Program-made: the position numbers and the translations under genes
Notes under the pieces: model-generated
Seen by the model: only the letters and a program-made list of their open reading frames with translations
What the model was told of the DNA's origin: nothing
Databases searched by the model: none
In this document: positions 18,727-47,353 of the stretch, in pieces
Layout of the letters: each line of letters starts with the position of its first letter
Position numbering within the stretch: the stretch's first letter is position 1
IMG/VR virus record: IMGVR_UViG_3300024239_000014
Span: 62,001 to 126,000 of that record
DNA length: 64,000 nucleotides
Direction: 5' to 3' (one strand)

Positions 18727-18744
18727 TTTACTTAAGGAACCGCT

Positions 18745-20524: not shown

Positions 20525-20547
20525 TGGTGCAATCTTTTATCCGTCAG

Positions 20548-20571
20548 AGGCGAGGGGAATTCCCCTCGCCT
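20548..20571 (+). terminator. Hairpin terminator
   Basis: Perfect palindrome AGGCGAGGGGAATTCCCCTCGCCT followed by TTTATT. Confidence 0.75.
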
Positions 20572-20590
20572 TTATTCAAGGAGTGCTAAT

Positions 20591-26000: not shown

Positions 26001-28239
26001 GTTCCTGTTGTCGGTCCAGCAACTCGACTCCTCGCTCTACAGGCTGGCTAAGCGCGCCATGCGCCGCTATCTGACCCGCCCGGTGTCTAACAGCACTGCT
26101 TGGGGCGTTTACGCTGTGGCTGCTTTTGATCTGCTGGTACAAGGCGCCAAAACCGATCTCTTTGGTGCTTACGATGTTAGTCCCACGGTTACGAACGCAG
26201 CACCGACTGGTACTGCAAGTATTAACTTGGGTCAAAGCAATGTTGGCGACATCATTGAAATCACCCCTGCCGTACTCTTGGCCGGTATTACGGATGCCGA
26301 CGGCGACCCGCTGACTGTGGTTGATTTGGAAATCATCTCCGGTACTGGTGTACTTGAGTCGGTTGCCAGCAACCCGCCCACTGTAACCGGCCCTGTCAGT
26401 CTGGCTGGCCCTATCGAGGGTCAGAGCATCGTTGTTGAAGTCGAAACGCTTCTCGAGGGTGCTGTAGACCCAGATGGCGATGTGTTGAGTGTGCGTAACG
26501 TATCGGTTGTTTCTGGCCCCATTACGATTTCTGGCACAGGTCCGTATACCGTCACCGCCACTGGCGTTGGCGCAGCGACACTGAGTTACGAAATCACTGA
26601 CGGTACAGGCAACACCCTTGCTCAGACTGCGACCATGACTACTCGCGCAGCGCCTGTGCTGAGCGGTACAGTACCTGTTGTTAGTGGGTTCACGGGTACG
26701 GTTGCAACTGGTCAGACGATCCGTGTCTCCGGTAGTAACCTGGCGTTGTCTCCGACCATTCTGGCAATCAAAGGTAACGAAGCAGCCGCCGGCACCAAGG
26801 TGGCCGACCACGCGCCATTTGGTCTGTTGGAGCATGGCCCTGTACCAGATACTTGGCGCTTTGCAGGCGACGGCACGATCGTGCTGACAGGTCAGGTATC
26901 TGATGTGGTGGAAGTGTACAAAGTCTTCCCGACGAAGAAGCACTCCGTCTTCGCGCATTACCATCTTCGTTACGAAAATGTGATGCCGAGAGCGAACTTC
27001 CCAGTTGGCGCACAGACTAAGGAACTCCGGTTCAGTCCGAATCAGAGCAACCTCCACAGCACCGGCCTCGTAATTGGTACTGGCTGGAATGCCATTGCCG
27101 ACCAGCTCTGGATCTACACCGGCGGCGGTAGCAATACCACCATCAGCGGTATGACCAAAGAAATGGCTGAGCAGTGGCACACACGCTCAACAGGTGCGAA
27201 GGTCACCAATGGTGTCGCCGTTCTGTCGAATATCGTATCAGGGCCCCTTACTGGTCAGCGGTATAACGAAAACGTTAGCGTCGCAGCCGATTACGACGGC
27301 TTTGGCAATGTGCTGATGCCGTTCTTCATTCGCGACGGTCTGACGCTCGATATGCGCATCCGCAACCTGATCGTACTTGACGGTTACGCTCGTGTCGAAT
27401 TGGGTAACCGCCCGAACCGTGCTGAGTGTACGATTCAGGATACGCAGTACGCTGCCATGGCTGGTAGCGACATTGACGTGAACCTGGATCTGAGCATGTT
27501 CTCTAGTAATGACGACATTTACTTGTTCGCCATTAACGAAGATAACGTGTATTCAAACGCCATCAAGATTCGTGACAAGCAGGTGGTGGCCTACAACCGT
27601 ATTGCCGATACGCTCGGCCTGTCTCGCGCCATGAATAACGGCGCGAGTTATCTCACCATGGATACTGCGTACGCAGCGTCTGTGCTTGAGAAGGCTTGGG
27701 TCGATTACCGGATTGGGTTCAAGGTCAATGGCTGGAATTCCACAACGTCGACCGAAACCGATCTTGGCTTCAGTGCCAGCTTGGCTTCGGCCAGCCGTGG
27801 TAACCTGGCCGTCAACCGGACCACAGGTGCAGTGACGCTCAAATCTCAAGTGAACAACGTTTCGGTAACTGTAGCAACTGTTAACCCAGCGACCTTCTTG
27901 GGTAACCGGTACGATTGGGTGCTGCGGATTCCGAAGAACACCGGTGAGATGATCCAGCTGTATAACGAAACAGTGGCTGATGGTCTGGTGCTCCTGGGTG
28001 AGGTGGCTCGTCCGGCAACGTTCGACAACTTTGCACCTGAGCGCTGGATGGCAGGTTACAGCAGCGCGCGCATGAATGGCGTGCTGTACTACCTGGGTTG
28101 TTTCGGTCACGATGGTCTGCCGATCTTCGATCTGCGTTTGAACGAAGGTTCTGGCCTGGTCGCTTACTCGGAAGGCGGGGTGGTCGCTCAGGCAACCATC
28201 AGTCAGAGTGGTGCGTCCATGACCTGGGTCACGGCGTAA
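23038..28239 (+). CDS. Giant modular receptor-binding protein: cadherin-like repeats, LamG-like domains, helical enzyme-like domain
   Basis: About 1733 aa; start overlaps the previous stop. Repeats N-x-PP..LL..D-[AP]-DG-[DN]..GTGP[WY]..[ST]DG-x-G at 23821, 24097, 26194 (half) and 26371. Confidence 0.8.
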   Translation: MPIIYLGNQAPTAATPVRVYVRNTNLLLASTAPYRAAEGDVITSIYITRGDNINASGSFKGVIYVSDVDDIATATLLKVVAFPLVTAPAWSMQKTTIEPVPLVSGKYYWFAFRNFPGAYVAKPGTMTHQSALATILSTDPDHPSLAGLTFTNVSGGCLVGFEAMNLFGRDTVILGSAQTSPNNHIARDAAQYRAENVRVRFGEFTNRGIRVEVRTNGSFMIHGEGNHTFPVQFSTDSGNTWSPEQAVTVRDATVAAPVTTPNRPPVVAGAAVLPVMQINADNTLTASSLLQGATDADGNAMVIEDLVLTAGVATITGTGPWVVRPTTSAQLTFGYTVSDGNGGTVQQTATALVNRPPVSSGVLSLANTDVGVGLVVSTNDLLANVSDPDGDALTITNVVVTMGTGTVTGTGPYTITGTAAGTLQLAVTVSDGRGGTVVQQVSMQAVTPMVVAQNLAVFNGTSAYSTIENWAPTGKYGVYAVFDTIPTVQDAYLLVDSNNRYISVLGNQGKAQFGALFPAATLPQLPVTKYFSAIVENGKVTFSDGVNDVSVTDPEITLGSTYSVIGKRGSVFSNMSLSTLILFDFQTESNSRVYRADASGQLLSIVAGKANPANINLTAAGTPNAMYEPAELTNINTAAAWSTWYDSTFTGGLVPSRITSPTRVSDFGTLFSGAGQAWLQTFVAMHRLTGSDIYLTRAKDLVDYMFNYTDDKRLSRSEIHLTTTPEDDRYVEAPKQYLYTGDGGTRVTGLAAKGWRRHNGTGWVVDVQTSGLIASGIARLADYMLSQTNLSSYHVWAAQVLTDLRPILNEHDTSWSDTKNTVSVGGFWYYLNVIDGAQNANSFGDTGKLSNPLPFNHGLPMGVAMAIINRWQTVPTYNTKAAAVVDFFRRHWWAGTNSDRLWWAGWDVTANNRKTVDVATAANVDVPSVYWLHKLGYNFSQAEVVAMARGILGAEYAGTGVLHNRIDRVAKDVGDDFAKDDAAQAVGQFLLSVQQLDSSLYRLAKRAMRRYLTRPVSNSTAWGVYAVAAFDLLVQGAKTDLFGAYDVSPTVTNAAPTGTASINLGQSNVGDIIEITPAVLLAGITDADGDPLTVVDLEIISGTGVLESVASNPPTVTGPVSLAGPIEGQSIVVEVETLLEGAVDPDGDVLSVRNVSVVSGPITISGTGPYTVTATGVGAATLSYEITDGTGNTLAQTATMTTRAAPVLSGTVPVVSGFTGTVATGQTIRVSGSNLALSPTILAIKGNEAAAGTKVADHAPFGLLEHGPVPDTWRFAGDGTIVLTGQVSDVVEVYKVFPTKKHSVFAHYHLRYENVMPRANFPVGAQTKELRFSPNQSNLHSTGLVIGTGWNAIADQLWIYTGGGSNTTISGMTKEMAEQWHTRSTGAKVTNGVAVLSNIVSGPLTGQRYNENVSVAADYDGFGNVLMPFFIRDGLTLDMRIRNLIVLDGYARVELGNRPNRAECTIQDTQYAAMAGSDIDVNLDLSMFSSNDDIYLFAINEDNVYSNAIKIRDKQVVAYNRIADTLGLSRAMNNGASYLTMDTAYAASVLEKAWVDYRIGFKVNGWNSTTSTETDLGFSASLASASRGNLAVNRTTGAVTLKSQVNNVSVTVATVNPATFLGNRYDWVLRIPKNTGEMIQLYNETVADGLVLLGEVARPATFDNFAPERWMAGYSSARMNGVLYYLGCFGHDGLPIFDLRLNEGSGLVAYSEGGVVAQATISQSGASMTWVTA

Positions 28240-28253
28240 CTCGATGTTTGGTC

Positions 28254-28290
28254 AGCTACGCTTGGGAAAAGGGTTTTCCTAGGCGTAGCT
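28254..28290 (+). terminator. Long hairpin between the two cadherin-fibre genes
   Basis: 17-bp stem with two G-U pairs and a GGG loop: AGCTACGCTTGGGAAAA-GGG-TTTTCCTAGGCGTAGCT. Confidence 0.7.
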
Positions 28291-28326
28291 TTCCTCATCT
28301 AACGTATTTTAAAGGAGGGTTTAGAC

Positions 28327-29709
28327 ATGCCGGTTATTGCAACACCGCCAGGTCAGCATCCAGGTCCGTGGCAGCTCACGATCCCTGAAGCAGGGTCGGT
28401 AACACTGCGGTACCGCGTTTCAGACGGTAAAGGCGGGTTCTTCACTCGCACGGCCATCGCATCTGCCATCGTACCTGTGGTCGGGTATGACTACTACGCC
28501 AATAAGTTCGGCCTCTATCGCAAAACTGTGAACTCGCTGGCCGCGTTTTTGACAGTGCCATCTCACTCGGTCGTTGCGGGCACAGTGTCCGACGAATGGC
28601 GGTTCGGTATCAAACTTAAAACCTGGGAGCCTTACACAGCTGGTACCCAAGGCATTGCTTGTCTATGTCGAGGTACGACGTCGAACACAGAAGAGGTCTT
28701 CATCATCAGTAACCTGGGACCGATCTCGATCAAGTATGTCGGCGGTACCACGGTAACTTTGACTGGAAACCATGGGATTCAACTTGGTCAGCGCGTTGAT
28801 TTTCGTTTGATTGTACCGTCAGTTGTCGGTCAACCAATCGAACTTTACGCCAGGATTAACAACGGCGCTGAATTTCTGATGGGTAGTGCGCTGACGCCTG
28901 CATCGTCTGGATTCAATCCGAATCGTTGGCTCTCCGGTAACCAGGGCATCAACGGGATGCTGTTCTACGTAGAGCGGTATCGTGATGGCGTACCTCTTTA
29001 CCAGTTCACGTTTAATGACTTCTGGTCCACGACGTTCTTGTCGCGTCACGATCCTCAGGTAACCGCAGTCTTGACAAAAGTCAGCGGCCACATTGAGCCT
29101 CAGGTGGATGTCACTGAATGGACGCCAGCGACGCCGGCTGACGACTTAGTCGCTGTAACACGTGTCACGACGGCGTCGCTGTCGGTCGATCGACGGATGG
29201 TGCTGACGGGTATTAGCGCACGACCTGCTGGCGTTGCCAGGCGTTATCTGTCGTGGGTGCGCACTCACGACCTGACGTACGACCTGGGTCTTTGCAGTAT
29301 CGGCACCACCGAAACCGTTCGGTTCAATGCCGATGGATCGATCAGCGCGCGTGTTACTGGCATGAGCAGCACTGTCGTAATGCGACCTGCCGGTCCTCAT
29401 GTCTTGACGGGCACGAAGCAGTTGATCGAATTGGTCGTGACTGATGACCGTTTCCAGGTCAAGGTGGATGGTGTGTTGGTTGCTGAACACGTGGCCAATG
29501 GTCTGTCGTTCATTCCTGGCCAATACCTGGAAGGTGCGTCTGGTACCACCATCTGGCGCGGTCGCCTGTACAACCTCGCAGTGTACAACGACGACACCCT
29601 GATTGAGTACTGGCCATTGGATGTAGGCGAAGGAGTCGGTGTAATGACCAACACAGTTGGTACTGCTGTTGCGACATTGGGTTCTGCCAATACGTGGGTC
29701 CACGGATAA
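28327..29709 (+). CDS. Fibre-associated protein: half cadherin-like repeat plus two LamG-like domains
   Basis: AAGGAGG SD. Starts GPWQLT..TLRYRVSDGKGG; next domain is paralogous to the C-terminus of the 23038 gene; C-terminal FQVKVDG..WRGRLYNLAVY..YWPLD. Confidence 0.75.
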   Translation: MPVIATPPGQHPGPWQLTIPEAGSVTLRYRVSDGKGGFFTRTAIASAIVPVVGYDYYANKFGLYRKTVNSLAAFLTVPSHSVVAGTVSDEWRFGIKLKTWEPYTAGTQGIACLCRGTTSNTEEVFIISNLGPISIKYVGGTTVTLTGNHGIQLGQRVDFRLIVPSVVGQPIELYARINNGAEFLMGSALTPASSGFNPNRWLSGNQGINGMLFYVERYRDGVPLYQFTFNDFWSTTFLSRHDPQVTAVLTKVSGHIEPQVDVTEWTPATPADDLVAVTRVTTASLSVDRRMVLTGISARPAGVARRYLSWVRTHDLTYDLGLCSIGTTETVRFNADGSISARVTGMSSTVVMRPAGPHVLTGTKQLIELVVTDDRFQVKVDGVLVAEHVANGLSFIPGQYLEGASGTTIWRGRLYNLAVYNDDTLIEYWPLDVGEGVGVMTNTVGTAVATLGSANTWVHG

Positions 29710-29718
29710 GTGTCATAG

Positions 29719-29755
29719 CGGGAGGGTCGAAAAGACCCTCCCGTTTTTTCTTTTT
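29719..29755 (+). terminator. Intrinsic terminator
   Basis: CGGGAGGGTC-GAAAA-GACCCTCCCG plus long U-tract. Confidence 0.85.
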
Positions 29756-29843: not shown

Positions 29844-31922
29844 ATGCCTCAGAATTTGGTGATTAAGTACCCTCTTGACCTGTCAGGGAATAACCCCACG
29901 AACCTGGTCAAGAATGAACCGCACACGATTGAGCCTACGGCCACGAATCGCGGTTTTGCATTGAACTACGGCCCTTTCTACACCAAGAGTGTAGTGGTCA
30001 AACACGTGGAATCAGGGAACTACCTGAGACCACGCCTGGATTACCTGTGCCTCCATCTGGATGAAATCGCTACGCGTGAATCTGGATACGAGGTCTGCAT
30101 CGCCATCCTCATTACCAACCAGACCTACAATGGTGAATTTGAAGTCACCTATCAGGTCGTGGGTGGCGAGTACAGTAGCTACGTGTCAGTGATTCAGCAG
30201 CTGGTAGAAGCACTCCAGCTCGATGACCGTCCTGTCAAGTGGGGCGATGTGATTGGTAAGCAGGATGAATACCCACCTGCGCCACACCTGCATACCCCGG
30301 ATGATCTGTACGGCTTTGAATTCCTTGTTGACGCATTGATGCGTCTGCACCAGGCGATTCTGCACGGCGATGCAACAGATCATGCGCAGATGAGACAAAA
30401 CATTCTCAATGCGCGCGCTTACGCCGAGCAATTGGCCGCCGGTGTACGCGAAGTCCTCGATCTTCACGTTACCAACCAGAACGATCCTCACAACGTCACT
30501 AAACTCCAGGTGGGTTTGGGGAATGTCGATAACTTTGCTACCGCCACGCCAGAAGAAGCGGCCAGTGCAACGGTGGCTAATAAGTTCCTGACGCCAGCGT
30601 TGTTGCATGGGGCAATACCGAACAGTTTGCCGATTACCCAGATCAATGGCGAAATTCAGCGTTTGTGGGACGCCATCAACGCCATCAACGCCATCCTCGC
30701 CCTCGGCAAGGGCACCACCACGATCTGGAACACCCTGACTGCGTGGTCGACACTGCGTCAGACGATGGCGGTGGCAAGTCGTAGCACGACTGTGCTTATC
30801 CCGGCTGGCCCGGATCGAACCAGTTCGTGGAATACTTCTTTCACAACTGCGTGGTCGTCTGATCGCCTGACAAACCGCATGACATCCATCGGTAGCAACT
30901 GGAACACGTCCTTCACTCAGAACACGACACGAACTACAAACGTGTCGGTGGTGACGGTATGGAACACCAATACGTCCCGCAACACCGGGTACAGTAAGGT
31001 GACCCAGACGTCTGAGAATATCGTGCAGAACACGTCAGTGTCATCAAGTAAGATCACGTCGTATCAGACCAGTTGGACGACGGAGATGGGGGTGGTAACC
31101 CGTACTTCTTCGTGGGTGACCGGTTTCTATTCGATCGCTTATATCGGACGTGAAACGTCGACTACAAACTACCAACAAGTATGGCAGGAACAGTCGAAGA
31201 ACACGAACACGTCGTGGTACAGTTACACTCCCATTGTGTCGTACCGTGCAGATGGGGCCGGCGGTAACGGGTGGCAAACGGTAGGTTTTACCCGTACGCT
31301 TAAATCACGTACGACGTCAACGACCGTAGGGCCGAGCAGCCGTGCCACGCAAACGACCTTTGCCACTGAATGGACCAGTGGTGGTTTCCGTCAGATGATC
31401 ATGACATGGAAAACCACGAGTACGCAGATTGGTGGCAACGTGTCGGCGTATGTCAGTACGACCTTCAACACTAACTTCTACACTGCGTTCCCGAAAGAAA
31501 GGTCCACATCGACCACAGTCTCGTCGCCGAACCTGGTACCTATGAGTCGCCAGACCAGCAAAACGACCAACACCACATTTAGTCGTGTGACATCGTTTAA
31601 CCAATCGCGCGACACCACCACGGCATGGACCATTGCTACGTCTTGGGCTACTCAGTATTCCAAGACAACCGCATGGGATCGTACCACGGACGTGATCACC
31701 AACATTGTTCAACAGACCAGTAATGCAGCAATGGTGCAAACCAACTTCAATACTGCTGTTGCAATGTCCAAAAGTACATCTGTGGTCACATCTGTGACAG
31801 TGGCTGGAGATAGCGAACGCCATAGTTCACGCCAGACCTCTTGGGATTCGACGTGGGGTACTGAGGCGAACACCAGCCAGATGACCCAGTTCATCCGCAA
31901 CACGCAGACGAGCTTTACGTAA
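29844..31922 (+). CDS. Virion fibre with Thr/Ser-rich (mucin-like) C-terminal domain
   Basis: N-terminal KYPLDLSG..EPH..YGPFY anchor domain and DPHNVTKLQVGLGNVDN repeat; last 403 aa contain 155 Thr+Ser by hand count. Confidence 0.8.
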   Translation: MPQNLVIKYPLDLSGNNPTNLVKNEPHTIEPTATNRGFALNYGPFYTKSVVVKHVESGNYLRPRLDYLCLHLDEIATRESGYEVCIAILITNQTYNGEFEVTYQVVGGEYSSYVSVIQQLVEALQLDDRPVKWGDVIGKQDEYPPAPHLHTPDDLYGFEFLVDALMRLHQAILHGDATDHAQMRQNILNARAYAEQLAAGVREVLDLHVTNQNDPHNVTKLQVGLGNVDNFATATPEEAASATVANKFLTPALLHGAIPNSLPITQINGEIQRLWDAINAINAILALGKGTTTIWNTLTAWSTLRQTMAVASRSTTVLIPAGPDRTSSWNTSFTTAWSSDRLTNRMTSIGSNWNTSFTQNTTRTTNVSVVTVWNTNTSRNTGYSKVTQTSENIVQNTSVSSSKITSYQTSWTTEMGVVTRTSSWVTGFYSIAYIGRETSTTNYQQVWQEQSKNTNTSWYSYTPIVSYRADGAGGNGWQTVGFTRTLKSRTTSTTVGPSSRATQTTFATEWTSGGFRQMIMTWKTTSTQIGGNVSAYVSTTFNTNFYTAFPKERSTSTTVSSPNLVPMSRQTSKTTNTTFSRVTSFNQSRDTTTAWTIATSWATQYSKTTAWDRTTDVITNIVQQTSNAAMVQTNFNTAVAMSKSTSVVTSVTVAGDSERHSSRQTSWDSTWGTEANTSQMTQFIRNTQTSFT

Positions 31923-31937
31923 CAAACTCACCTATGT

Positions 31938-31966
31938 AGGGGGCTTCGGCCCCCTCATTTATTCCG
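31938..31966 (+). terminator. Short hairpin (attenuator or processing site) inside the fibre-GT operon
   Basis: AGGGGGC-TTCG-GCCCCCT then CATTTATTCCG. Confidence 0.6.
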
Positions 31967-31976
31967 GAAGTTGAAA

Positions 31977-32225
31977 ATGGACAAATCCGTTGCTATCGAA
32001 TTTGAAAAGCTCAACACACGCGTTGCCGAGCTTGAAAAGCGCCTGGTTGCTGCTGAGGAACAGGCAAAGAACGCCGAGCAATTGGCACAAGAGTCGTTGC
32101 GCCTTGTTGAACGTGCGTCATCGCTCCTGGTGGAACATATCGCTACCTTCGATACCCGTGTGGCGGAAGCCTCGGATATTATCGTGGCTCGTGTGACCAA
32201 GCAGATCCCGCACTTGATGTTGTAA
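31977..32225 (+). CDS. Small coiled-coil protein
   Basis: About 82 aa with heptads LNTRVAELEKRLVAAEEQA; lies between the fibre and the GT genes. Confidence 0.7.
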   Translation: MDKSVAIEFEKLNTRVAELEKRLVAAEEQAKNAEQLAQESLRLVERASSLLVEHIATFDTRVAEASDIIVARVTKQIPHLML

Positions 32226-32240
32226 CGGAGTAGTTGACCC

Positions 32241-33104
32241 ATGAGTGATAGCAATAAAAAGAAAAAGGCTTCGTTGGACATTGTCCTGGCTAACACTTAT
32301 GCTTCTGAAGCCAATAAGGTAGCACACAGCGGGTACCTGACTCGCGCCGGTAAGATTCGTGAATCAAACCGCATTGCTGAGCTGCTGGTGGCCGGGGCCG
32401 CGAAGCGCAAGATCAAAATCCAGTACGATATTGCTTACGATGGCCATCCTCATGAGTTATCGTTCACGGAATGCTTTGGTGGCATGGGTGGTGTTTATAT
32501 CAGACCTGCGGACAGCAACCTGTCGCGGCAGATGCTGGCTTCACCGTTTAGAGCAACTCGTGATATCAACTTTCTCTTGAATGCTGAAGACAAATACGCG
32601 CAGCTACCCATCCACTGTCCGGTTGATCACGTGATCTTCCTGCCCGGTACGAACCTTCTGGATCGGTATAAGGCCGAAGTGTTCCGACCCTATTACAGAG
32701 AAGGCGTTAAGGTCAAACCACACCCCATCACGAGCGAGTATTTCCGTTTTCTGCTCCTGCGTGAATTTGGTTCAGACGTCCTTCCTCTTAAGGGTTCGGC
32801 ACAGTCGATCCTAAAGCAGGTGAAAGAAGTCACCGTGACGCAGCACACGGAGATGGGTCTTTACGCCCTATTGCAAGGCAAGAAGGTTAACGTCATCCCA
32901 GCAATGAAGGGACTGTTACCGGTGTACCGGTACTTCTACGAAACAGGTGAGCGCCTCAAGGAGGTGTTGTCGTCCCACCTGTCGGGTTTGTTCTTCATGA
33001 ACGATAACATCGAAGAACAGATCGAAGAATGGTTCGATTATTATCAATCCCAGTCCCAACTGCGTCAAACACGTTTCTTCGACGTGTTTGGAGGTAAACG
33101 ATGA
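32241..33104 (+). CDS. Putative GT-B glycosyltransferase, capsule-synthesis (KpsC/KpsS-like) type
   Basis: VKVKPHP and EVTVTQHTEMGLYALLQGKKV resemble the KxHP and V-x-T-x-x-S-x-x-G-x-EA-x-x-x-GK-x-V motifs of that fold. Confidence 0.5.
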   Translation: MSDSNKKKKASLDIVLANTYASEANKVAHSGYLTRAGKIRESNRIAELLVAGAAKRKIKIQYDIAYDGHPHELSFTECFGGMGGVYIRPADSNLSRQMLASPFRATRDINFLLNAEDKYAQLPIHCPVDHVIFLPGTNLLDRYKAEVFRPYYREGVKVKPHPITSEYFRFLLLREFGSDVLPLKGSAQSILKQVKEVTVTQHTEMGLYALLQGKKVNVIPAMKGLLPVYRYFYETGERLKEVLSSHLSGLFFMNDNIEEQIEEWFDYYQSQSQLRQTRFFDVFGGKR

Positions 33105-34054
33105 TTCTGTTCTCCTGCACTAACCGCGCTTATCAGGACGTGTCCTTGGTTTGGGCTCATTCGTTCAAGAACAGCTGCGAGAAGTTCGAAAACAATAAGA
33201 AGTTCACACCAATTCTTTTTTGCACGACCGATGTCGATACCGAACTCTTTGCTGATACAGGCATTGAAATTCGGTACTTGCCCACCATTGGTGGGGTGGA
33301 AGAAGGATTGTTCAATCAGACGACCACCGAAGGGATGGTGATGCGACTGAAAGCCATGGATCTCTTGCACGCTGAAGGCGTGGAAAAGGTCGCGTACATG
33401 GACACAGACACTTTGATCCGTGGTGACATCAGTGAATTGTTGTTGGCACCACTGACGCCCGAGAAACCAATAGCAGCGGCTTCCGACTTCGTGTACATCG
33501 ATGACGACCGCCTGGGATCGACGTACCAACAAATCGTCCCCGATTATCCGCGCAGAACATCGATCAACAAGAAGTACTTCAACTCCGGTGTGATGGTTCT
33601 GCTTCTAAGGCCGTTGGTGGAAGAAACCAAACGCTACGGCTGTACGTCGTTGGAATCCTTTTATCTGAAGCACAAGGAAATGTGCCGGTTCCCTGATCAA
33701 GACGCACTCAATAAGCTGGCAAGGGAATATGTCGGCCTACCGCGTCGGTACAACTTCTTCCCTGAGCTGCACATCTTCGCGATCATGTCCAGTGATGAAC
33801 TAATGCACCACCGTGCACGTATCTTCCGTGAAGGGGTGATCGTGCACTTCTTGTCATTGTTCAAACCCTGGGTCAAACATGATTATGTTAACACGGCAAC
33901 AATGCAAGTCCCATTTGAAATGTACTGGGAAGCATTGAAGCCCATCCGACACAAGCTGTCGCCTTCGTTCGTTGAAAATGTGCGTTATAACGTGGAAACG
34001 CATCGCATCATCATCGAGCAGGCCAGACACGGTCATTACAACGCCGAGGATTAA
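33101..34054 (+). CDS. Glycosyltransferase family 8
   Basis: VAYMDTD (DxD), YFNSGVMVL, FPDQDALN, IVHF..KPW. Confidence 0.92.
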   Translation: MILFSCTNRAYQDVSLVWAHSFKNSCEKFENNKKFTPILFCTTDVDTELFADTGIEIRYLPTIGGVEEGLFNQTTTEGMVMRLKAMDLLHAEGVEKVAYMDTDTLIRGDISELLLAPLTPEKPIAAASDFVYIDDDRLGSTYQQIVPDYPRRTSINKKYFNSGVMVLLLRPLVEETKRYGCTSLESFYLKHKEMCRFPDQDALNKLAREYVGLPRRYNFFPELHIFAIMSSDELMHHRARIFREGVIVHFLSLFKPWVKHDYVNTATMQVPFEMYWEALKPIRHKLSPSFVENVRYNVETHRIIIEQARHGHYNAED

Positions 34055-34055
34055 C

Positions 34056-34883
34056 ATGGCCGACGTTACAGTGATCATTCCAGCTTCTCGAGCTTTTACC
34101 TTAGAAGAGTGTTTGGTACACCTTAAGAGAAGCGTCGGGGTAACCTATCGCCTGATTGTAGTGCTGGCAAATCGTGATCCAGCATTGCGTAAACTGGCTC
34201 AGGGCGCCGGGGCTGAGATCATTGAACATTATGCCAAAGGTGACCAGCATAAGGCCAGGGCAATTGCCCTGGCCTCTGTAACCACCGAATTTGTTCATTT
34301 CTTAGATGACGACGATTTCATCTGCCCTGAATTCTTAAGAGACGGTGTTGCACTACTAAGAGATGATTCTACATGTGGCGTTGCGTTCAGTCTGCCATTT
34401 AAATCGGTGGGTGTTAGGAACGTACTCATTGGTCCGCATTTTCAAGCAGGGTTTGTTAATCCAAGCTGCACGATTTATCGCACCAAGATGATCCGTGAAG
34501 TCTTTGCGATGCTACCTGAGCCGGTGCTTTCCTCTTCTGAGGACAAGTTGTACACGCTTGTGTTAGCTTCGATCTTCCGTGCGAAATTCCGGTGTTTCAG
34601 AGCACCTGTAGTCCGCGGTTCCTTCGTAGAGAACCGGAAGGTCTGGGACACCCTAATGTCGAAATCTCTCTACGACTTTTGGTACCGGATCTTGCTACTT
34701 TTACCGGAATATCAAGACGATGCCGTTGCTGATCATTACGTCAGAACGGTATTGGCAGAAACCCGACAATGGTACACCCGATGCGTCACCTACTCTTTAC
34801 CTGTATCAATCGACATTATGAAAATCAGGGGATCGTTTGGTTATCAGCACTTAGAACCTTGGCCCAATCAGCACCAGTGTTGA
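34056..34883 (+). CDS. Glycosyltransferase family 2
   Basis: Start MADVTVIIPA; FVHFLDDDD and a downstream ED motif (SSEDKL). Confidence 0.85.
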   Translation: MADVTVIIPASRAFTLEECLVHLKRSVGVTYRLIVVLANRDPALRKLAQGAGAEIIEHYAKGDQHKARAIALASVTTEFVHFLDDDDFICPEFLRDGVALLRDDSTCGVAFSLPFKSVGVRNVLIGPHFQAGFVNPSCTIYRTKMIREVFAMLPEPVLSSSEDKLYTLVLASIFRAKFRCFRAPVVRGSFVENRKVWDTLMSKSLYDFWYRILLLLPEYQDDAVADHYVRTVLAETRQWYTRCVTYSLPVSIDIMKIRGSFGYQHLEPWPNQHQC

Positions 34884-35779
34884 AGGATTGTCGGATCATT
34901 CTTTTCCACGCCCACGATGTAAATCTTCAGCGATTTAAAGACGCCTTCCCTGACATCGAGTACCGTCTCGTCAAAAGTCCGATCGAAGGTAAGACCAAGC
35001 TGTTCAGCGCTCCGGTTAGCGAAGGAATGTGCTTGCGCATTGACGCTATGGATCAACTAATCCAAGAAGGAGTTGACAAGGTAGTCTACTCTGATGCCGA
35101 TGCGGTGTGGTTCAAGGATCCTGCCAAATTGTTCGACACACCGGTTGACGCGGTTCATCGTTTTGCAGCGGTACGCGACATGGTGTATCAAAAGCACCCT
35201 GAGTTTAAAGAAGCCTACCCCATTGCATGTCGCGATTGGGGTCACCGACAGGCTATCAGTGACAACTACTTCAACTCAGGTGTGATGGTTGTTTCGCTCA
35301 AGGGGTTATCGGATTACCTAACACTATTGGGTAATGCGTCACTGACAGAATACGTACAGCAGAACCAACACCGGTACCTCTTTCCGGACCAAGATCCGCT
35401 GAACGAACTAGGCCACAATCGCATCGAGCTTCCACGCGAATTCAATGCCTACATTGATCACGTGGTCGGTCATTCGATGACTGCCTGTGAAGTAATGGAA
35501 AACCGTTACAAGATTTCGCAGTCTGCTATCATTCATTGGATCACCATGACCAAACCCTGGTTACATGAACGTGAACCGAGTTTGACTAGCGCTGCCATGC
35601 CCCACGAGAAGTACTGGGAAGCTATGCAACCCGTACTGGAGTTTCTTGATGGGGGTTTTATTAAAGCTGTCTCGATCAAGCTTCGGCAGTATGCCCACCT
35701 CGTGGAGCATGCCAAGCGCGATTTCAAGGAAGTCGGAGGCTACCACCATGACACGTACCGTTGTTTCGTGCGTAAATAA
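34781..35779 (+). CDS. Glycosyltransferase family 8
   Basis: VVYSDAD, YFNSGVMVV, FPDQDPLN, IIHW..KPW; start MRHLLFTC. Confidence 0.92.
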   Translation: MRHLLFTCINRHYENQGIVWLSALRTLAQSAPVLKDCRIILFHAHDVNLQRFKDAFPDIEYRLVKSPIEGKTKLFSAPVSEGMCLRIDAMDQLIQEGVDKVVYSDADAVWFKDPAKLFDTPVDAVHRFAAVRDMVYQKHPEFKEAYPIACRDWGHRQAISDNYFNSGVMVVSLKGLSDYLTLLGNASLTEYVQQNQHRYLFPDQDPLNELGHNRIELPREFNAYIDHVVGHSMTACEVMENRYKISQSAIIHWITMTKPWLHEREPSLTSAAMPHEKYWEAMQPVLEFLDGGFIKAVSIKLRQYAHLVEHAKRDFKEVGGYHHDTYRCFVRK

Positions 35780-36653
35780 GGCGTACAGTGATCCATTAAA
35801 AGTCTGGCTCAGTGTAATGGCTGAGCAACCCTCGCACCCTCACGTGATCCTGTATCACGCCAGCGACATTGATCCCAATGATTTCCCCACCTCAGTGGAG
35901 GTCACGTGGCGGTTGCTGGATGTGCCTACTCAGAAGTCCACCAGACCTCATCGCCGTCAAGGTATCCTGATGCGGTTTCTGGCGTTCGATGATCTCCATG
36001 CGCGCAAGATGACCCACATCGTGTACATGGATCTCGATGCGTTACCTTTTGGTAACCTGTCACCACTTCTGAATGTGCCGGTGCGTGCATCCTCACCCAT
36101 TGCCGCTGTACCTGATTTGGTGTTCCTGGGGTCTAAGCAGTACGACGCGTACTACGACCGGAGTCGTCCTGAAATCGTACATCGTTTGAACTTCAATCCG
36201 CGGTATTTCAATGCTGGGGTGATGGCGATTTATTTGCCAGGACTCTATGCGCGGTTAAACGGCAAGACGTTGTACGAGTATTGGGAAGAAAACAAACACC
36301 GGTACTTGTTTCATGGTCAGGACCCATTGAATGAACTGGTACCTGATTATACGCCTTTACCGGCGACCTTTAACGCCTTTGCCGATCTGTACATTGCACC
36401 GAAGATGACTGAACATCAACGTGAGTTGCACACCTCGGTGATTAGCAATGCCGCTATCGTGCATTGGCTATCCAATACAAAGCCGTGGGAGGCGCTTAGC
36501 AACATTCCAGTTGCTTGGGCTATGATGCCTCACCAGTTGTACTGGGATGCAGCACAACGCGTTTTAGACCGCTTAAGCGAGGGGTTTGTAACGGCACTTA
36601 CTGAAAACCTCCGACGATACGAGGAACTGACGCATGACGAAGCCGTTGTGTAG
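35748..36653 (+). CDS. Glycosyltransferase family 8
   Basis: GGAGG SD; IVYMDLD, YFNAGVMAI, GQDPLN, IVHW..KPW. Confidence 0.9.
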   Translation: MTRTVVSCVNKAYSDPLKVWLSVMAEQPSHPHVILYHASDIDPNDFPTSVEVTWRLLDVPTQKSTRPHRRQGILMRFLAFDDLHARKMTHIVYMDLDALPFGNLSPLLNVPVRASSPIAAVPDLVFLGSKQYDAYYDRSRPEIVHRLNFNPRYFNAGVMAIYLPGLYARLNGKTLYEYWEENKHRYLFHGQDPLNELVPDYTPLPATFNAFADLYIAPKMTEHQRELHTSVISNAAIVHWLSNTKPWEALSNIPVAWAMMPHQLYWDAAQRVLDRLSEGFVTALTENLRRYEELTHDEAVV

Positions 36654-37677
36654 GGCACCGTTCACGACCTTTAACCACAAACCCGAAGGGTATCGGCCGT
36701 GTTGTCAACGTCAGAACCCGGCAGTAGTGCACACCGATGGTAACTGGTGGAATTCTGAATACCTGCGTGAATTCAGGAAATCCATGTTTTCCTACGACAC
36801 CCTATCAGACGTGTGTAAGCGGTGTTACGACCGCAAAACTGCCGATGATCCGGGATACAGTTTACCATTCGATCTCAAGGACTATAACCCCAAGACGGGC
36901 GAAGTATACGCACCGCCGAAACAAGTGCTGGTTTTTACAGGCACAAAGTGTGATCTGGCTTGCGATATGTGTGATTCGACTTTTTCGGATACGCATGCGA
37001 AGGTTTATCCTGACCGCATCATCGATATCGATGTGGTTACAGAAGACTCAGCCAGGCACATCATCGGCCGGTACAACCCAGAACAGGTGGTGATCTACGG
37101 TGGCGAACCTTTTGTTAGCCGTGAACTGTACCCGTTGGTACAGCTTGCTTTAATGAAACGGTCATCCATCACGTTCTTGACGAACGGTAACCGCGATCTG
37201 GCTAAACACCCGGTGTTTAAAGAGCTCGTACTGCCGAACGCTACTCGTTTCTCATTTATCTTTTCGATAGATGGGACTGCCGATGTCAACGAACAGATCC
37301 GCAAAGGAGTACGCACTGAACAGATCCTCAGCAATGTTGAATTGTGCAGAAGTGAAAAGATTTGGCACGAACTCCATTTTACGTGTTCGAAGCTTAATGC
37401 GCATAACCTGACTGCTTTCGTCCGTTGGGTTTTATCGCTCGAGTGTTACATGGTCCCGTTCTTTTCGCTCTCAGTAGGGATTGTCGATTTTCCGGATGAT
37501 TATCGTGCAAGTACCTTGCCGATGGGCGAACGGTTATCAATCTCCCGCGACCTTTGTGCGTTAAAGGAAGAAATCAACTCGGCAGTAGACGCTGGAACCA
37601 TGGTGTTTACACCCAAACAGTTTTCTGACTTGATGACGGGACTGGATGGCACACTTGCTTCGTTGGATTTAGAATAG
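36634..37677 (+). CDS. Radical SAM protein with N-terminal twitch/SPASM-like Fe-S domain
   Basis: N-terminal CRAPF..RPCC..WNSEYLREFRKSM..CKRC; radical SAM motif CDLACDMC; YGGEPF; SIDG. Confidence 0.9.
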   Translation: MTKPLCRAPFTTFNHKPEGYRPCCQRQNPAVVHTDGNWWNSEYLREFRKSMFSYDTLSDVCKRCYDRKTADDPGYSLPFDLKDYNPKTGEVYAPPKQVLVFTGTKCDLACDMCDSTFSDTHAKVYPDRIIDIDVVTEDSARHIIGRYNPEQVVIYGGEPFVSRELYPLVQLALMKRSSITFLTNGNRDLAKHPVFKELVLPNATRFSFIFSIDGTADVNEQIRKGVRTEQILSNVELCRSEKIWHELHFTCSKLNAHNLTAFVRWVLSLECYMVPFFSLSVGIVDFPDDYRASTLPMGERLSISRDLCALKEEINSAVDAGTMVFTPKQFSDLMTGLDGTLASLDLE

Positions 37678-37686
37678 GGACATAAG

Positions 37687-37717
37687 CGGGAGGGCCTTTT
37701 GGCCCTCCCGTATGCCG
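37687..37717. terminator. Bidirectional hairpin with TATGCCG tail
   Basis: CATAAG-CGGGAGGGCC-TTTT-GGCCCTCCCG-TATGCCG at the convergence point. Confidence 0.8.
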
Positions 37718-43092: not shown

Positions 43093-43144
43093 AGCGAACT
43101 CCTAGTTGATAAAACCAAAAACAAAACCCCGTCGGGTGGAAGTA

Positions 43145-43170
43145 GGAGAGTAGCCGAAAGGCTACTCTCC
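43145..43170 (-). terminator. Hairpin terminator
   Basis: GGAGAGTAGCC-GAAA-GGCTACTCTCC. Confidence 0.65.
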
Positions 43171-43180
43171 CGTGGGTTGG

Positions 43181-45121: not shown

Positions 45122-45176
45122 AGCACACCTTCGAACGGTAGCGGGATTATAGATGTTTGAAATGCGTATAACTTAA

Positions 45177-45213
45177 CGGCATAAGAGGAGGGGTTACCCC
45201 TCCTCGCTTTATG
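45177..45213 (-). terminator. Hairpin with TATGCCG tail after helicase
   Basis: Minus strand GCATAAAGC-GAGGAGGGG-TAA-CCCCTCCTC-T-TATGCCG. Confidence 0.75.
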
Positions 45214-47241: not shown

Positions 47242-47313
47242 AAAGATTCCTCTACCTAAAAATACCTCGACTATAACATGGAACAAGCAAAGATTTAAAA
47301 CTGATTTTGCGAC

Positions 47314-47350
47314 ATAATGGGAGGGTCTTTCGACCCTCCCACCTATTCCG
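47314..47350 (-). terminator. Hairpin with TATGTCG/TATTCCG flanks
   Basis: TGGGAGGGTC-TTTC-GACCCTCCCA. Confidence 0.75.
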
Positions 47351-47353
47351 TGA

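What the first reader, a model, noticed from the sequence alone, without database searches (positions are those of the whole stretch)
29844..37677. Candidate virion-fibre glycosylation system: mucin-like fibre, five glycosyltransferases and a radical SAM enzyme in one operon
Seen: between strong hairpins (29719 and 37687) lie a virion-anchor fibre with 155 Thr/Ser in its last 403 aa, a small coiled-coil protein, a KpsS-like GT-B, GT8, GT2, GT8, GT8 and a twitch radical SAM enzyme. The enzyme genes abut or overlap. None shows an obvious signal peptide or TM, so their substrates should be cytoplasmic. Established: streptococcal serine-rich repeat adhesins are encoded beside GT8/GT2 enzymes that O-glycosylate them, and some mycobacteriophages and giant viruses glycosylate their virions. 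Inference: this jumbo phage builds a multi-sugar, possibly radical-SAM-modified glycan on its own fibre for shielding, adhesion or host-surface mimicry. I know of no characterised example in phiKZ-like phages. Alternatives are host LPS-core remodelling (GT8 includes WaaI/WaaJ) or DNA modification.
Basis: partly seen in the sequence, partly recalled or inferred. Interest (0 to 1): 0.92.

Follow-up and report, generated by a model that had tools for sequence, protein, structure and literature searches.

The report
Phage fibre-modification gene module
A giant phage encodes a tail-fibre-like protein with a threonine/serine-rich end beside a row of sugar-transferring enzymes; the same fibre-plus-enzyme pairing recurs in many unrelated phages, which suggests these phages chemically decorate their own fibres.

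Summary
Three GT8, one GT2 and a radical SAM enzyme pass Pfam thresholds with intact motifs.

Two descriptions need correcting. The Thr/Ser domain is not mucin-like: it has 1.7% Pro, conserved length and position, a two-residue beta-type periodicity and an Arg-x-Thr signature. A third hairpin separates the fibre gene from the enzyme genes.

The 287-aa 'KPHP' protein defines an unannotated family of 358 cluster representatives. In 23 of 31 assessable lineages it lies directly downstream of a Thr/Ser-rich Arg-x-Thr repeat protein, usually with a small helical protein between them. These lineages include KVP40-like Vibrio phages, Caulobacter phage Lullwater and many marine viral contigs. GT8-like and N-twitch radical SAM genes join the module in several lineages.

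The KPHP protein looks like a very divergent GT-B enzyme with the HP motif of CMP-sugar transferases. It lacks the QXXXD motif of KpsC/KpsS-type enzymes.

Best reading: a phage-encoded system that O-modifies, most likely glycosylates, its own fibre. The genetic link is well supported. The chemistry is inferred only.

The parts
29717..29745 (+). Strong hairpin with T run; terminator of the preceding fibre-gene unit. A TTATG-containing spacer follows.
   Evidence: 12 bp stem, 8 GC pairs, then TTTTTTCTTTTT.
29844..30605 (+). Fibre residues 1-254: phiKZ-type virion/fibre anchor domain plus one NPH..VTK.QVGLG..N repeat.
   Evidence: phrog_2163 E 3.7e-78. tblastn gives 33-40% identity to virion structural and tail-fibre proteins of 253 jumbo-phage records. 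A paralogue lies at 10633-12576 in the window.
30627..30707 (+). Fibre residues about 262-288: short helical neck between the anchor and the repeat domain.
   Evidence: Sequence read; a helix in the low-confidence AF2 model; conserved in alignment A2.
30711..31922 (+). Fibre residues 290-692: Thr/Ser-rich (38%) Arg-x-Thr repeat domain, the proposed substrate.
   Evidence: 155 T+S in 403 aa, 18 W, 7 P. Even spacing of aromatic and basic residues 0.73 vs 0.50. Thr at +2 of 16 of 22 Arg. Conserved position by position. No Pfam or PDB match.
31938..31955 (+). GC-rich hairpin (TTCG loop) followed by TTTATTCC, between the fibre gene and the enzyme genes. Candidate attenuator and/or internal promoter unit.
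   Evidence: The same hairpin+TTTAT arrangement precedes other genes in the window.
31977..32225 (+). 82-aa helical protein with the conserved motif LVEHIATFDTR ('LEH-helix' protein).
   Evidence: The motif is shared by the equivalent small ORF in 8 of 11 compared modules. It occurs fused to the N-terminus of a KPHP protein in P0086.
32241..33104 (+). 287-aa 'KPHP' protein: divergent GT-B-like enzyme with an HP motif. Proposed priming transferase acting on the repeat domain.
   Evidence: phrog_26179 E 2e-28. Family of 358 representatives. Invariant K118 Y119 N138 K159 H161 P162. Remote hits to KpsC, WbbB, Capsule_synth and GT52.
33101..34054 (+). GT8 glycosyltransferase a (317 aa).
   Evidence: PF01501 E 4.3e-17; motifs intact. 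A GT8-like gene directly follows KPHP also in L005, L007, L008, L019, L025, L026 and L120.
34056..34883 (+). GT2 glycosyltransferase (275 aa from the ATG).
   Evidence: PF00535 E 3.2e-7, 30.9 bits against a 23.3 cut-off; DDD motif; orthologues in L005, L007 and L008.
34769..35779 (+). GT8 glycosyltransferase b (336 aa). It overlaps the end of the GT2 gene by 115 nt in another frame.
   Evidence: PF01501 E 3.7e-18. The overlap is conserved: tblastn matches from residue 1 in L005 and L008.
35748..36653 (+). GT8 glycosyltransferase c (301 aa from the ATG). Present in L008, absent from L005.
   Evidence: PF01501 E 5.3e-22.
36634..37677 (+). Radical SAM enzyme with an N-terminal Cys cluster (N-twitch type), 347 aa.
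   Evidence: PF04055. NF033640 at 117 bits, below the 170 cut-off. CDLACDMC and Cys 6/23/24/61/64. Homologues lie in the modules of L005, KVP40 and L020.
37685..37711 (+). Strong hairpin closing the unit. The downstream genes are on the opposite strand.
   Evidence: AGCGGGAGGGCC-TTTT-GGCCCTCCCGT; ORF list.

Best explanation
The region encodes a phage system that post-translationally O-modifies, most likely glycosylates, the phage's own fibre in the host cytoplasm before assembly.

The substrate is the C-terminal 400-residue domain of the 692-aa fibre. It is a Thr/Ser-rich repeat with two-residue periodicity. One face carries Trp/Phe/Tyr/Arg and Thr, the other is almost purely Ser/Thr, and there is a recurrent [S/T]-R-x-T signature.

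The conserved core of the machinery is the 287-aa KPHP protein and the 82-aa helical protein. KPHP is a very divergent GT-B-like enzyme with the HP motif typical of transferases that use cytidine-nucleotide-activated donors. The helical protein probably acts as its adaptor or as a substrate chaperone.

I infer that KPHP puts the first residue on Ser/Thr of the repeats. The three GT8 enzymes (retaining) and the GT2 enzyme (inverting) then extend it with hexoses from host UDP-sugars, and the N-twitch radical SAM enzyme tailors the glycan or the repeat.

Shown here: the gene content, the motifs and the conserved linkage across phage lineages. Inferred: that the modification is a glycan, the order of steps, the donors and the benefit (adhesion, shielding or surface mimicry).
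For: (1) Enzyme identities and intact catalytic motifs.
(2) Synteny of fibre, helix protein, KPHP, GT8, GT2, GT8 and radical SAM genes in a relative with only 54% KPHP identity (L005), and in L007 and L008.
(3) In unrelated phages the KPHP homologue directly follows a Thr/Ser-rich ORF. Examples: KVP40 0254-0255-0256; Caulobacter phage Lullwater gp40 (T7-type fibre)-gp41-gp42; Cr30 gp253-255; contigs L019, L020, L022, L025 and L026.
(4) Systematic count: 104 loci fall into 32 KPHP clusters. In 23 of 31 assessable clusters a same-strand Thr/Ser-rich ORF with the RxT signature lies within 2.5 kb upstream, usually within 0-320 nt. Pooled, 454 of 530 Arg have Thr at +2. Such ORFs are otherwise rare: 15 of 426 ORFs in the first set of loci, and 8 of those 15 are the KPHP neighbours.
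(5) The repeats share statistics beyond composition: even spacing 0.72-0.97 against 0.50, and RxT in 108 of 128 Arg over nine lineages.
(6) The small helical protein is a real family with the motif (L/V)(L/V)EH..F(D/E).R, and it occurs fused to KPHP in P0086. KPHP also occurs fused to a methyltransferase-like domain in P0099, which fits an enzyme.
(7) KPHP shows a GT-B resemblance by three independent routes. Profile against PDB gives KpsC at E 0.02-0.07, aligning KxHP and S-E-x-G-x-x-A-x-L-x-G-K. Foldseek gives WbbB at E 7.8e-4, then KrkA, TagF and a CMP-bound capsule polymerase. Pfam gives Capsule_synth or GT52 for a few members.
(8) A GT8-like gene follows KPHP in at least five lineages. 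N-twitch radical SAM genes lie in the modules of the window, L005, KVP40 and L020.
(9) None of the enzymes has a TM segment or signal-like N-terminus.
Against: There is no biochemical evidence of any kind, and all links are guilt by association.

Every KPHP-to-GT-B signal is individually weak: E 0.02-0.07 against PDB, an AF2 model at pLDDT 59, and TM-score 0.38. The family lacks the QXXXD nucleophile motif of the beta-Kdo transferases it most resembles.

The repeat domain looks like a structured beta fibre, so its Thr/Ser richness could be purely architectural. AF2 gave no usable model (pLDDT 33).

Eight of 31 lineages lack an RxT neighbour. These include a 206-kb contig (L120) with coiled-coil protein, KPHP and GT8 genes only.

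In most marine lineages no recognisable GT8, GT2 or radical SAM gene follows KPHP.

A hairpin separates the fibre gene from the enzyme genes.
Confidence: 0.6

Rival explanations
1. Fibre-assembly module. The small helical protein and KPHP would be dedicated folding or trimerisation chaperones (in the manner of T4 gp57A and gp38) for an unusually Thr/Ser-rich beta fibre. The GT8, GT2 and radical SAM genes of the jumbo phage would do something unrelated.
For: The helical protein has the size and character of small fibre chaperones. The repeat domain is length- and position-conserved with beta periodicity. Many lineages have only repeat protein, helix protein and KPHP, with no other recognisable enzyme. 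KPHP's GT-B similarity is sub-significant.
Against: KPHP has invariant polar residues typical of an active site (K118 Y119 N138 K159 H161 P162 over 111 sequences). They include the HP motif, which aligns with the catalytic His of KpsC. KPHP occurs fused to a methyltransferase-like domain. GT8-like genes follow it in at least five lineages.
Confidence: 0.15
2. Non-glycan modification of the fibre. KPHP would be a TagF-like phosphotransferase adding glycerol- or sugar-phosphate, or radical SAM enzymes would cross-link or otherwise alter the repeats as in RiPP maturation. The GT8 and GT2 genes would be secondary.
For: TagF and a CMP-bound TagF-like capsule polymerase are among the Foldseek hits. 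In L019 the module's radical SAM enzyme is a PapB-like SPASM peptide maturase, and the repeat protein there ends in a Cys-rich tail. Other modules carry QueC-like, NAPRTase-like or fatty-acid-desaturase-like genes instead of GTs.
Against: In the window the module holds four canonical Leloir glycosyltransferases with intact motifs. No phosphotransferase family gave a significant match.
Confidence: 0.12
3. Host envelope remodelling. The GT block would modify LPS core or capsule of the infected cell, for example for superinfection exclusion, and would merely be parked beside fibre genes.
For: The best NCBIfam hit of two GT8 proteins is LPS 3-alpha-galactosyltransferase, at only 22-28 bits against a 461 cut-off. 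Jumbo-phage GT clusters have been read as surface-polysaccharide modification systems (PMC7824862). L120 has KPHP+GT8 with no Thr/Ser neighbour visible.
Against: This does not explain the recurrent placement of KPHP directly after RxT repeat proteins in 23 of 31 lineages, nor the fusion of the repeat domain to a virion anchor. The block has no flippase, polymerase, undecaprenyl-phosphate transferase or membrane protein.
Confidence: 0.08
4. DNA hypermodification. The GTs and the radical SAM enzyme would glycosylate or otherwise modify phage DNA bases.
For: Phage GTs that hypermodify DNA are well known (cited in PMC12619734). Some database records auto-annotate the KVP40 homologues of the radical SAM enzyme as QueE, and a QueC-like gene sits in the KVP40-type module.
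Against: QueE models score only about 24-30 bits against cut-offs of 206-260, while N_Twi_rSAM scores 112-135. No base-modification genes are in the block. Linkage is to fibre genes and repeat proteins, not to replication genes.
Confidence: 0.03

Closest known systems
Serine-rich repeat adhesin glycosylation of streptococci and staphylococci (GtfA/GtfB priming, then GT8/GT2-type extension)
   Different: No GtfA/GtfB (GT4) pair and no accessory Sec genes are present. The proposed priming enzyme belongs to an unannotated HP-motif family. The repeats have Arg-x-Thr and aromatic residues with beta periodicity rather than SASx-type disordered repeats. The substrate is a virion fibre.
Mycobacteriophage virion glycosylation (Freeman et al. 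2023, as cited in PMC12619734)
   Same: Phage-encoded glycosyltransferases decorate the phage's own structural proteins at C-terminal regions.
   Different: There the targets are capsid and tail-tube subunits of actinobacteriophages. Here the target is a fibre repeat domain or a separate repeat protein in phages of Gram-negative hosts, with a different enzyme set and extra radical SAM enzymes. That paper could not be read here.
Retaining beta-Kdo transferases KpsC/KpsS (GT107) and WbbB (GT99)
   Same: Closest structural and profile matches of the KPHP protein. The HP motif and the following S-x-x-G-x-x-A-L-L-x-G-K helix align with KpsC. These are reduced GT-B-like enzymes that were also not recognisable as GTs from sequence (PMC10148158).
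   Different: No conserved QXXXD nucleophile motif. No Pfam Capsule_synth hit for the window's protein. KPHP is shorter (about 280 aa). The acceptor would be a protein, not a Kdo-lipid.
Cytoplasmic O-heptosylation of autotransporter adhesins (AIDA-I/Aah, TibA/TibC) and flagellin O-glycosylation with nonulosonic acids (Maf, FlmG)
   Same: How it would work: a dedicated cytoplasmic transferase, encoded next to its substrate, puts host-pathway nucleotide sugars on many Ser/Thr of a repetitive beta-structured surface protein (established knowledge; recalled, not tested here).
   Different: No sequence relationship was found to those transferase families in any search. Here the protein ends up in a virus particle.
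Glycosylated fibrils of giant viruses (Mimivirus) and chlorovirus capsid glycans
   Same: Virus-encoded multi-enzyme glycan synthesis independent of host ER-type machinery, decorating external virion fibres (established knowledge).
   Different: Those are eukaryotic viruses with different enzymes and substrates, and they encode their own nucleotide-sugar pathways. None of those pathway genes is in this block.

Membership tests
Glycosyltransferase family 8 (Pfam PF01501) | Profile match above the curated gathering score | tested here: met
   63.0, 66.5 and 79.0 bits against a cut-off of 24.3 for the three proteins.
Glycosyltransferase family 8 (Pfam PF01501) | DxD metal/nucleotide-sugar motif and C-terminal H..KPW motif | tested here: met
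   YMDTD / YSDAD / YMDLD and HFLSLFKPW / HWITMTKPW / HWLSNTKPW.
Glycosyltransferase family 8: LPS core enzymes WaaI/WaaJ (NF011718) | Equivalog-level score | tested here: not met
   22-28 bits against a cut-off of 461.
Glycosyltransferase family 2 (Pfam PF00535) | Profile match above the gathering score, and an acidic DxD motif | tested here: met
   30.9 bits against 23.3; DDD at residue 84.
Radical SAM superfamily (PF04055) | CxxxCxxC cluster motif and profile match above the gathering score | tested here: met
   CDLACDMC at 106-113; 34.2 bits against 29.5.
N-terminal twitch radical SAM subfamily (NCBIfam NF033640) | Score above the curated cut-off | tested here: not met
   117.4 bits against 170. 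It is still by far the best family (next best 34 bits), covering residues 4-309. Relatives in Vibrio phage K566 score 193-202.
N-terminal twitch radical SAM subfamily (NCBIfam NF033640) | Extra Cys cluster N-terminal to the radical SAM core | tested here: inconclusive
   Cys 6, 23, 24, 61 and 64 precede the core. Cluster binding cannot be tested with sequence tools.
Retaining beta-Kdo transferases (KpsS/KpsC GT107, WbbB GT99) | HP motif (His protonates the CMP leaving group) | tested here: met
   K159-P-H161-P162 is invariant in 111 family members and aligns with the KpsC VKVHP motif. The role of the His is taken from PMC10148158.
Retaining beta-Kdo transferases (KpsS/KpsC GT107, WbbB GT99) | Invariant QXXXD motif carrying the Asp nucleophile | tested here: not met
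   No conserved Q...D in the family consensus. The conserved N-proximal motifs are D-K-Y and G-x-N.
Retaining beta-Kdo transferases (KpsS/KpsC GT107, WbbB GT99) | Significant sequence or profile match (Pfam Capsule_synth PF05159) | tested here: not met
   No hit for the window's protein. Only 4 of 111 members reach E<=0.01. Profile against PDB KpsC gives E 0.02-0.07.
GT-B fold glycosyltransferases | Two Rossmann-like domains with a C-terminal nucleotide-binding domain | tested here: inconclusive
   The AF2 model has pLDDT 59; the C-terminal half scores 70-89 and the N-terminal half is poor. Foldseek top hits are GT-B enzymes: WbbB E 7.8e-4 at TMq 0.38, then SpnG, KrkA and TagF in PDB, and RfaG-type GTs in BFVD.
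Serine-rich repeat protein glycosylation systems | GtfA/GtfB priming pair and an exported SRR substrate | tested here: not met
   No GT4 or GtfB-like domain in any of the eight proteins. The fibre has no signal-like N-terminus.
Mucin-like (PTS) domain | Pro/Thr/Ser-rich, compositionally driven, length-variable disordered region | tested here: not met
   Pro 1.7%. 11 of 438 alignment columns gapped among 57-85% identical relatives. W, R and T are positionally conserved, with two-residue periodicity.
phiKZ-type paralogous fibre / virion structural protein family (phrog_2163) | N-terminal anchor domain shared by several fibre paralogues of one jumbo phage | tested here: met
   E 3.7e-78. A second paralogue lies at 10633-12576 (E 6.9e-95). 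There are two matching places per genome in most related jumbo phages.
Virion glycosylation systems of phages (mycobacteriophage type) | Glycan demonstrably attached to a virion protein | not testable with these tools
   Needs glycan staining and mass spectrometry of virions or of co-expressed proteins.

The most novel reading that the evidence does not exclude
A widespread, so far unannotated phage system in which a new family of HP-motif transferases, working with a dedicated small helical partner, primes Arg-x-Thr sequons on a new kind of Thr/Ser-rich beta-repeat fibre. The donor would be a host cytidine-activated sugar acid such as Kdo or a nonulosonic acid. Lineage-specific enzymes would then elaborate the product: GT8 and GT2, N-twitch or SPASM radical SAM enzymes, desaturase-like, QueC-like or methyltransferase domains. 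The result would be LPS-core-like or flagellin-like glycans on virions of phages infecting Gram-negative bacteria, from podophages to jumbo phages. In marine phages the repeat proteins reach about 1,500 residues.
Probability: 0.25. Interest if true: 0.9.

Novelty: new variant of a known kind. Interest (0 to 1): 0.8.

Why it matters
Virion glycosylation has been shown experimentally only for a few mycobacteriophages and for giant viruses of eukaryotes. If this module does what its anatomy suggests, self-decoration of receptor-binding fibres would be common among phages of Gram-negative bacteria, with consequences for host recognition, adhesion to surfaces or mucus, and recognition of therapeutic phages by antibodies.

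It would also assign a function to three protein families now annotated only as 'hypothetical': the KPHP enzyme, the LEH-helix protein and the RxT repeat proteins. It would give the N-twitch radical SAM subfamily a biological context.

The module is present in phages with standard laboratory hosts (KVP40 and nt-1; Caulobacter phages Lullwater and Cr30), so the question can be tested directly.

Tried and rejected
- **DNA search.** Near-identity search of the block against 50,697 phage records found nothing. The window is an uncultured IMG/VR contig.
- **tblastn of the Thr/Ser domain alone.** No match, but the low-complexity filter was on. The word-indexed protein search found only four close relatives.
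- **Single-protein and family-wide scans for KPHP relatives.** The single-protein scans and the A1 alignment scans found only the contig itself, plus one short fragment in the metagenome scan. Alignments A3 and A7 were too divergent to scan with. Sub-family alignments A8-A10 worked. The genome-contig scan was therefore never run, so I cannot say whether bacteria carry the family outside prophages.
- **AF2 of the repeat domain.** With 5 sequences it gave pLDDT 33. The long strands it draws are not evidence.
- **AF2 of KPHP.** With 9 sequences it gave pLDDT 59.
- **Strict whole-protein RxT criterion.** It wrongly scored the window itself as negative. It was replaced by a criterion restricted to the Thr/Ser-rich segment.
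- **Literature.** Searches for phage fibre glycosylation, twitch radical SAM enzymes with GTs, and threonine-rich phage proteins found no description of this module. The Freeman et al. paper is not held.
- **N-glycosylation sequons.** I considered them (13 NxS/T in the fibre). No NGT/GT41-like enzyme is present, and the shared signature across lineages is RxT, not NxS/T, so I did not pursue this.
- **QueE identity of the radical SAM enzyme.** Rejected on scores.

Full report
**What is there**

The window is part of an uncultured 249,640-bp viral contig, IMGVR_UViG_3300024239_000014. It has no close DNA relative among 50,697 phage records.

Its gene content is that of a phiKZ-like jumbo phage. 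It carries an SbcC-like nuclease, a helicase, several fibre paralogues with the phrog_2163 anchor, and other tail-fibre and virion-protein homologues.

The gaps between successive genes from the KPHP gene to the radical SAM gene are -4, +1, -115, -32 and -20 nt. The 115-nt overlap of GT2 with the second GT8 is conserved in two relatives.

Three GT8 proteins, one GT2 and a radical SAM enzyme pass Pfam gathering scores and keep their catalytic motifs. None has a TM-like segment. The count of 155 Thr+Ser in the last 403 residues is exact.

**Corrections to the description**

(i) A third hairpin (31938-31955) followed by TTTATTCC separates the fibre gene from the enzyme genes. The same pattern, a GC-rich hairpin followed by TTTAT(G/C/T), precedes many genes of the window. 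It looks like a combined terminator/promoter unit. 'One operon' is therefore uncertain.

(ii) The Thr/Ser-rich domain is not mucin-like.
- Pro is 1.7%.
- Among four relatives at 57-85% identity only 11 of 438 columns have gaps, and W (79% invariant), R (83%) and T (73%) are the best conserved residues.
- Aromatic and basic residues lie at even spacings, 0.73 against 0.50+-0.03 in shuffles. That is the signature of extended strands with two different faces.
- Thr follows Arg at +2 in 16 of 22 cases.
- AF2 gave no usable model (pLDDT 33). There is no Pfam or PDB relative.

(iii) The 287-aa protein has no Pfam, NCBIfam or PDB sequence match of its own.

(iv) The radical SAM enzyme is closest to the N-terminal-twitch subfamily NF033640, but scores below its cut-off, 117 against 170 bits.

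**The decisive evidence: comparative context**

The 287-aa protein, here called KPHP after its invariant K-P-H-P, has close relatives in three contigs with the same gene order.
- L005 is a 202-kb contig at 54% KPHP identity. It carries an 830-aa fibre paralogue, a 671-aa Thr/Ser-rich fibre, a 77-aa helix protein, KPHP, GT8, GT2, GT8, a radical SAM enzyme and DUF1353.
- L007 (85% identity) and L008 show the same order over the parts they cover.

More telling are the remote homologues (24-32% identity) in unrelated cultured phages. Each follows a small Thr/Ser-rich ORF.
- **Vibrio phage KVP40:** 0254 (197 aa, 65% T/S, TSRST repeats), 0255 (72-aa helix), 0256 (KPHP), 0257, a QueC-like gene, a NAPRTase-like gene, then two N-twitch radical SAM genes.
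- **Caulobacter podophage Lullwater:** the T7-type tail fibre gp40, then gp41 (215 aa, 40-47% T/S), then gp42 (KPHP).
- **Caulobacter myophage Cr30:** a fibre-like gp253, then the T/S/Y-rich gp254, then gp255 (KPHP).

Metagenomic homologues repeat the pattern.
- **L019:** repeat protein, helix, KPHP, GT8-like, SPASM radical SAM.
- **L020:** repeat protein, helix, KPHP, a 220-aa protein, a QueC-radical SAM fusion.
- **L022:** repeat protein, helix, KPHP.
- **L025 and L026:** S74 fibre, repeat protein, helix, KPHP, GT8-like, desaturase-like.

**Systematic count**

A profile search of 1.84 billion representatives finds 358 family members, nearly all 270-340 aa. Sub-family alignments brought in 95 more viral loci.

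Over 104 loci the KPHP genes fall into 32 clusters at about 65-70% identity, of which 31 are assessable. In 23 of them a same-strand ORF with a Thr/Ser-rich segment of at least 80 aa, in which at least 60% of Arg are followed by Thr at +2, lies within 2.5 kb upstream. It is usually 0-320 nt away, with only the small helix gene between. Pooled, 454 of 530 Arg carry Thr at +2.

Such ORFs are otherwise rare. In the first set of loci 15 of 426 ORFs reached the Thr/Ser threshold; 8 of these are the KPHP neighbours and most of the rest are alternative-frame artefacts.

In marine contigs the repeat proteins reach 1,400-1,530 aa, with conserved short N- and C-terminal domains.

The exceptions are:
- the L073 group;
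- a DLP_6-like T4-type group, where a long ordinary fibre precedes the helix and KPHP genes;
- L030 and L121;
- L120, a 206-kb contig with coiled-coil protein, KPHP and GT8 genes but no repeat neighbour in view.

L084 is probably a further positive whose repeat ORF is broken or mis-called.

**What the parts are**

- **Helical proteins.** They are a true family with the motif (L/V)(L/V)EH..F(D/E).R in 8 of 11 compared modules. One database protein, P0086, is a fusion of this helix to KPHP, which argues that the two work together.
- **KPHP.** It keeps K118, Y119, N138, K159, H161 and P162 in all 111 aligned members, and D63, D117, G136, E204 and G249 in at least 90%. Only one kind of remote relative recurs:
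  - KpsC beta-Kdo transferases in profile-against-PDB searches, at E 0.02-0.07, aligning KxHP and the following S-E-x-G-x-x-A-x-L-x-G-K;
  - WbbB, KrkA, TagF and a CMP-bound capsule polymerase by Foldseek on a mediocre model;
  - Capsule_synth or GT52 for a few members in Pfam;
  - GT-B enzymes in BFVD.

  According to PMC10148158 beta-Kdo transferases share the HP motif with CMP-sialic-acid transferases, and their nucleophile sits in an invariant QXXXD motif. KPHP has the first and lacks the second. I therefore do not file it under GT107/GT99. I read it as a divergent GT-B-like enzyme that probably uses a cytidine-activated donor. Another member, P0099, carries a C-terminal methyltransferase-like domain, which fits an enzyme better than a chaperone.
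- **GT8-like genes.** They directly follow KPHP in the window-type phages and in L019, L025, L026 and L120. KVP40.0257 shows only weak similarity.
- **Radical SAM enzymes.** Those of the window, L005, KVP40 (three paralogues) and L020 all have N_Twi_rSAM as their best family. L019 has instead a PapB-like peptide maturase, beside a repeat protein with a Cys-rich tail.

**Mechanism proposed**

Shown: the fibre's repeat domain, the helix protein and KPHP form a conserved genetic unit across podo-, myo- and jumbo phages. In the window this unit is extended by four canonical glycosyltransferases and a radical SAM enzyme, all cytoplasmic.

Inferred: KPHP, helped by the helix protein, transfers the first residue to Ser/Thr of the R-x-T repeats. 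KPHP must act on the protein itself, if it acts at all, because in Lullwater and Cr30 it is the only recognisable enzyme next to the repeat protein. GT8 and GT2 enzymes extend the glycan from UDP-sugars, and the radical SAM enzyme tailors the sugar or the repeat.

Speculative: the donor (Kdo or a nonulosonic acid from the host's CMP-sugar pool) and the benefit (adhesion, shielding or mimicry of host surface glycans).

**Rivals**

- **Chaperone reading of helix+KPHP (0.15).** It fits the structured nature of the repeat but not the invariant active-site-like residues, the methyltransferase fusion or the recurrent GT8 partner.
- **Non-glycan O-modification or cross-linking (0.12).** The TagF-like hits and the variety of redox enzymes in other lineages keep this alive.
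- **Host LPS or capsule remodelling (0.08).** Iyer et al. favour this reading for jumbo-phage GT clusters (PMC7824862). It does not explain the linkage to repeat proteins, and the block has no membrane components.
- **DNA modification (0.03).** It has only the auto-annotated 'QueE' labels in its favour, and the scores contradict them.

**Novelty**

Only 29 of 50,697 cultured phage records carry a KPHP gene. These are KVP40-like Vibrio phages, Lullwater-like phages and Cr30 of Caulobacter, and Stenotrophomonas phage DLP_6, and all annotate it as hypothetical. The repeat proteins are phrog_30374 'unknown function' or unassigned, with no Pfam family. Six literature searches found no description of the module.

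Virion glycosylation by phage-encoded GTs is known for mycobacteriophages (cited in PMC12619734), and Ser/Thr-rich adhesin glycosylation is known in Gram-positive bacteria. I therefore rate this a new variant of a known kind, with new substrate, priming-enzyme and helper families.

**Limits**

All functional statements rest on gene neighbourhood, motifs and weak remote homology. Both structure predictions were made with shallow alignments. Bacterial genomes were not scanned. Locus flanks were only 5-10 kb, so the 'no neighbour' cases may have the repeat gene elsewhere in the genome.

Noticed in passing
window 10540-10632, 13990-14028, 20540-20590, 31938-31976, 43100-43180(-), 45130-45200(-), 47290-47370(-), 49330-49400(-), 59640-59700(-): Many genes are preceded by a GC-rich hairpin followed immediately by TTTAT(G/C/T) and then the ribosome-binding site. 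Several stems share the sequence GGGAGGG(T/C)C. This looks like a reused terminator-plus-promoter unit, reminiscent of the TATG-type late promoters of phiKZ-like phages (recalled, not tested).
   Followed up: partly
L010 (Pseudomonas phage pPa_SNUABM_DT01, MW735835.1) 10623-18756: The fibre paralogue most similar to the window's anchor is followed by a cupin-like gene, at least five radical SAM/SPASM genes and a 178-aa protein ending in CHTSCHTSCHS. This is a different, possibly RiPP-like, fibre-adjacent enzyme cluster in another jumbo phage.
   Followed up: no
L019 7199-11018: In this jumbo-phage fragment the repeat protein is a separate 195-aa ORF ending in a Cys-rich tail (SACACCNACGNT). 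The module's radical SAM enzyme is PapB-like (ranthipeptide thioether maturase type, E 1e-24, below cut-off), which hints at cross-linking of the repeat protein.
   Followed up: partly
L015 (KVP40 NC_005083.2 131224-137161) and L020 1641-8745: The KVP40-type module adds a QueC-like PP-loop protein, a NAPRTase-like protein and N-twitch radical SAM enzymes. In L020 the QueC-like domain is fused to the radical SAM enzyme. Some records label these radical SAM genes QueE, which their scores do not support.
   Followed up: partly
L025 5268-6044 and L026 3268-4023: A membrane fatty-acid-desaturase-like (di-iron) gene follows KPHP and the GT8-like gene in two related contigs. It is the only membrane protein seen in any version of the module.
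   Followed up: no
L022 2005-2832 (-), L084 131-4783 (-): Gene callers annotated the reverse strand of Thr/Ser-rich ORFs as Val/Leu/Asn-rich 'proteins' (VVVVLN...). The real plus-strand repeat ORF (L022 1919-2905) was missed. Repeat proteins of this kind are probably under-annotated in databases.
   Followed up: yes
L056, L057, L063, L101, L110, L111 (about 270-4890 in each): Marine viral contigs encode 1,400-1,530-aa proteins made almost wholly of T/S-rich ...TTTAFNTTF.TS(R/K).T... repeats. They have a conserved 45-aa N-terminus and a C-terminus ending ...RYWDGSQWTE.
   Followed up: partly
L018 (Stenotrophomonas phage DLP_6, KU682439.2) 177-1655: A 492-aa ORF just upstream of the helix and KPHP genes is not annotated in the GenBank record.
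   Followed up: no
window 10633-12576 and 14029-29709: In L005 the Thr/Ser-rich fibre sits directly after the first fibre paralogue. In the window about 17 kb of further fibre-like genes (963, 586, 815, 1,740 and 460 aa) lie between the two, which suggests an insertion or expansion of receptor-binding genes.
   Followed up: no
L005 14494-14838: In the 54%-identical relative a DUF1353 gene follows the radical SAM gene and the third GT8 is missing, so enzyme content varies even between close relatives.
   Followed up: no
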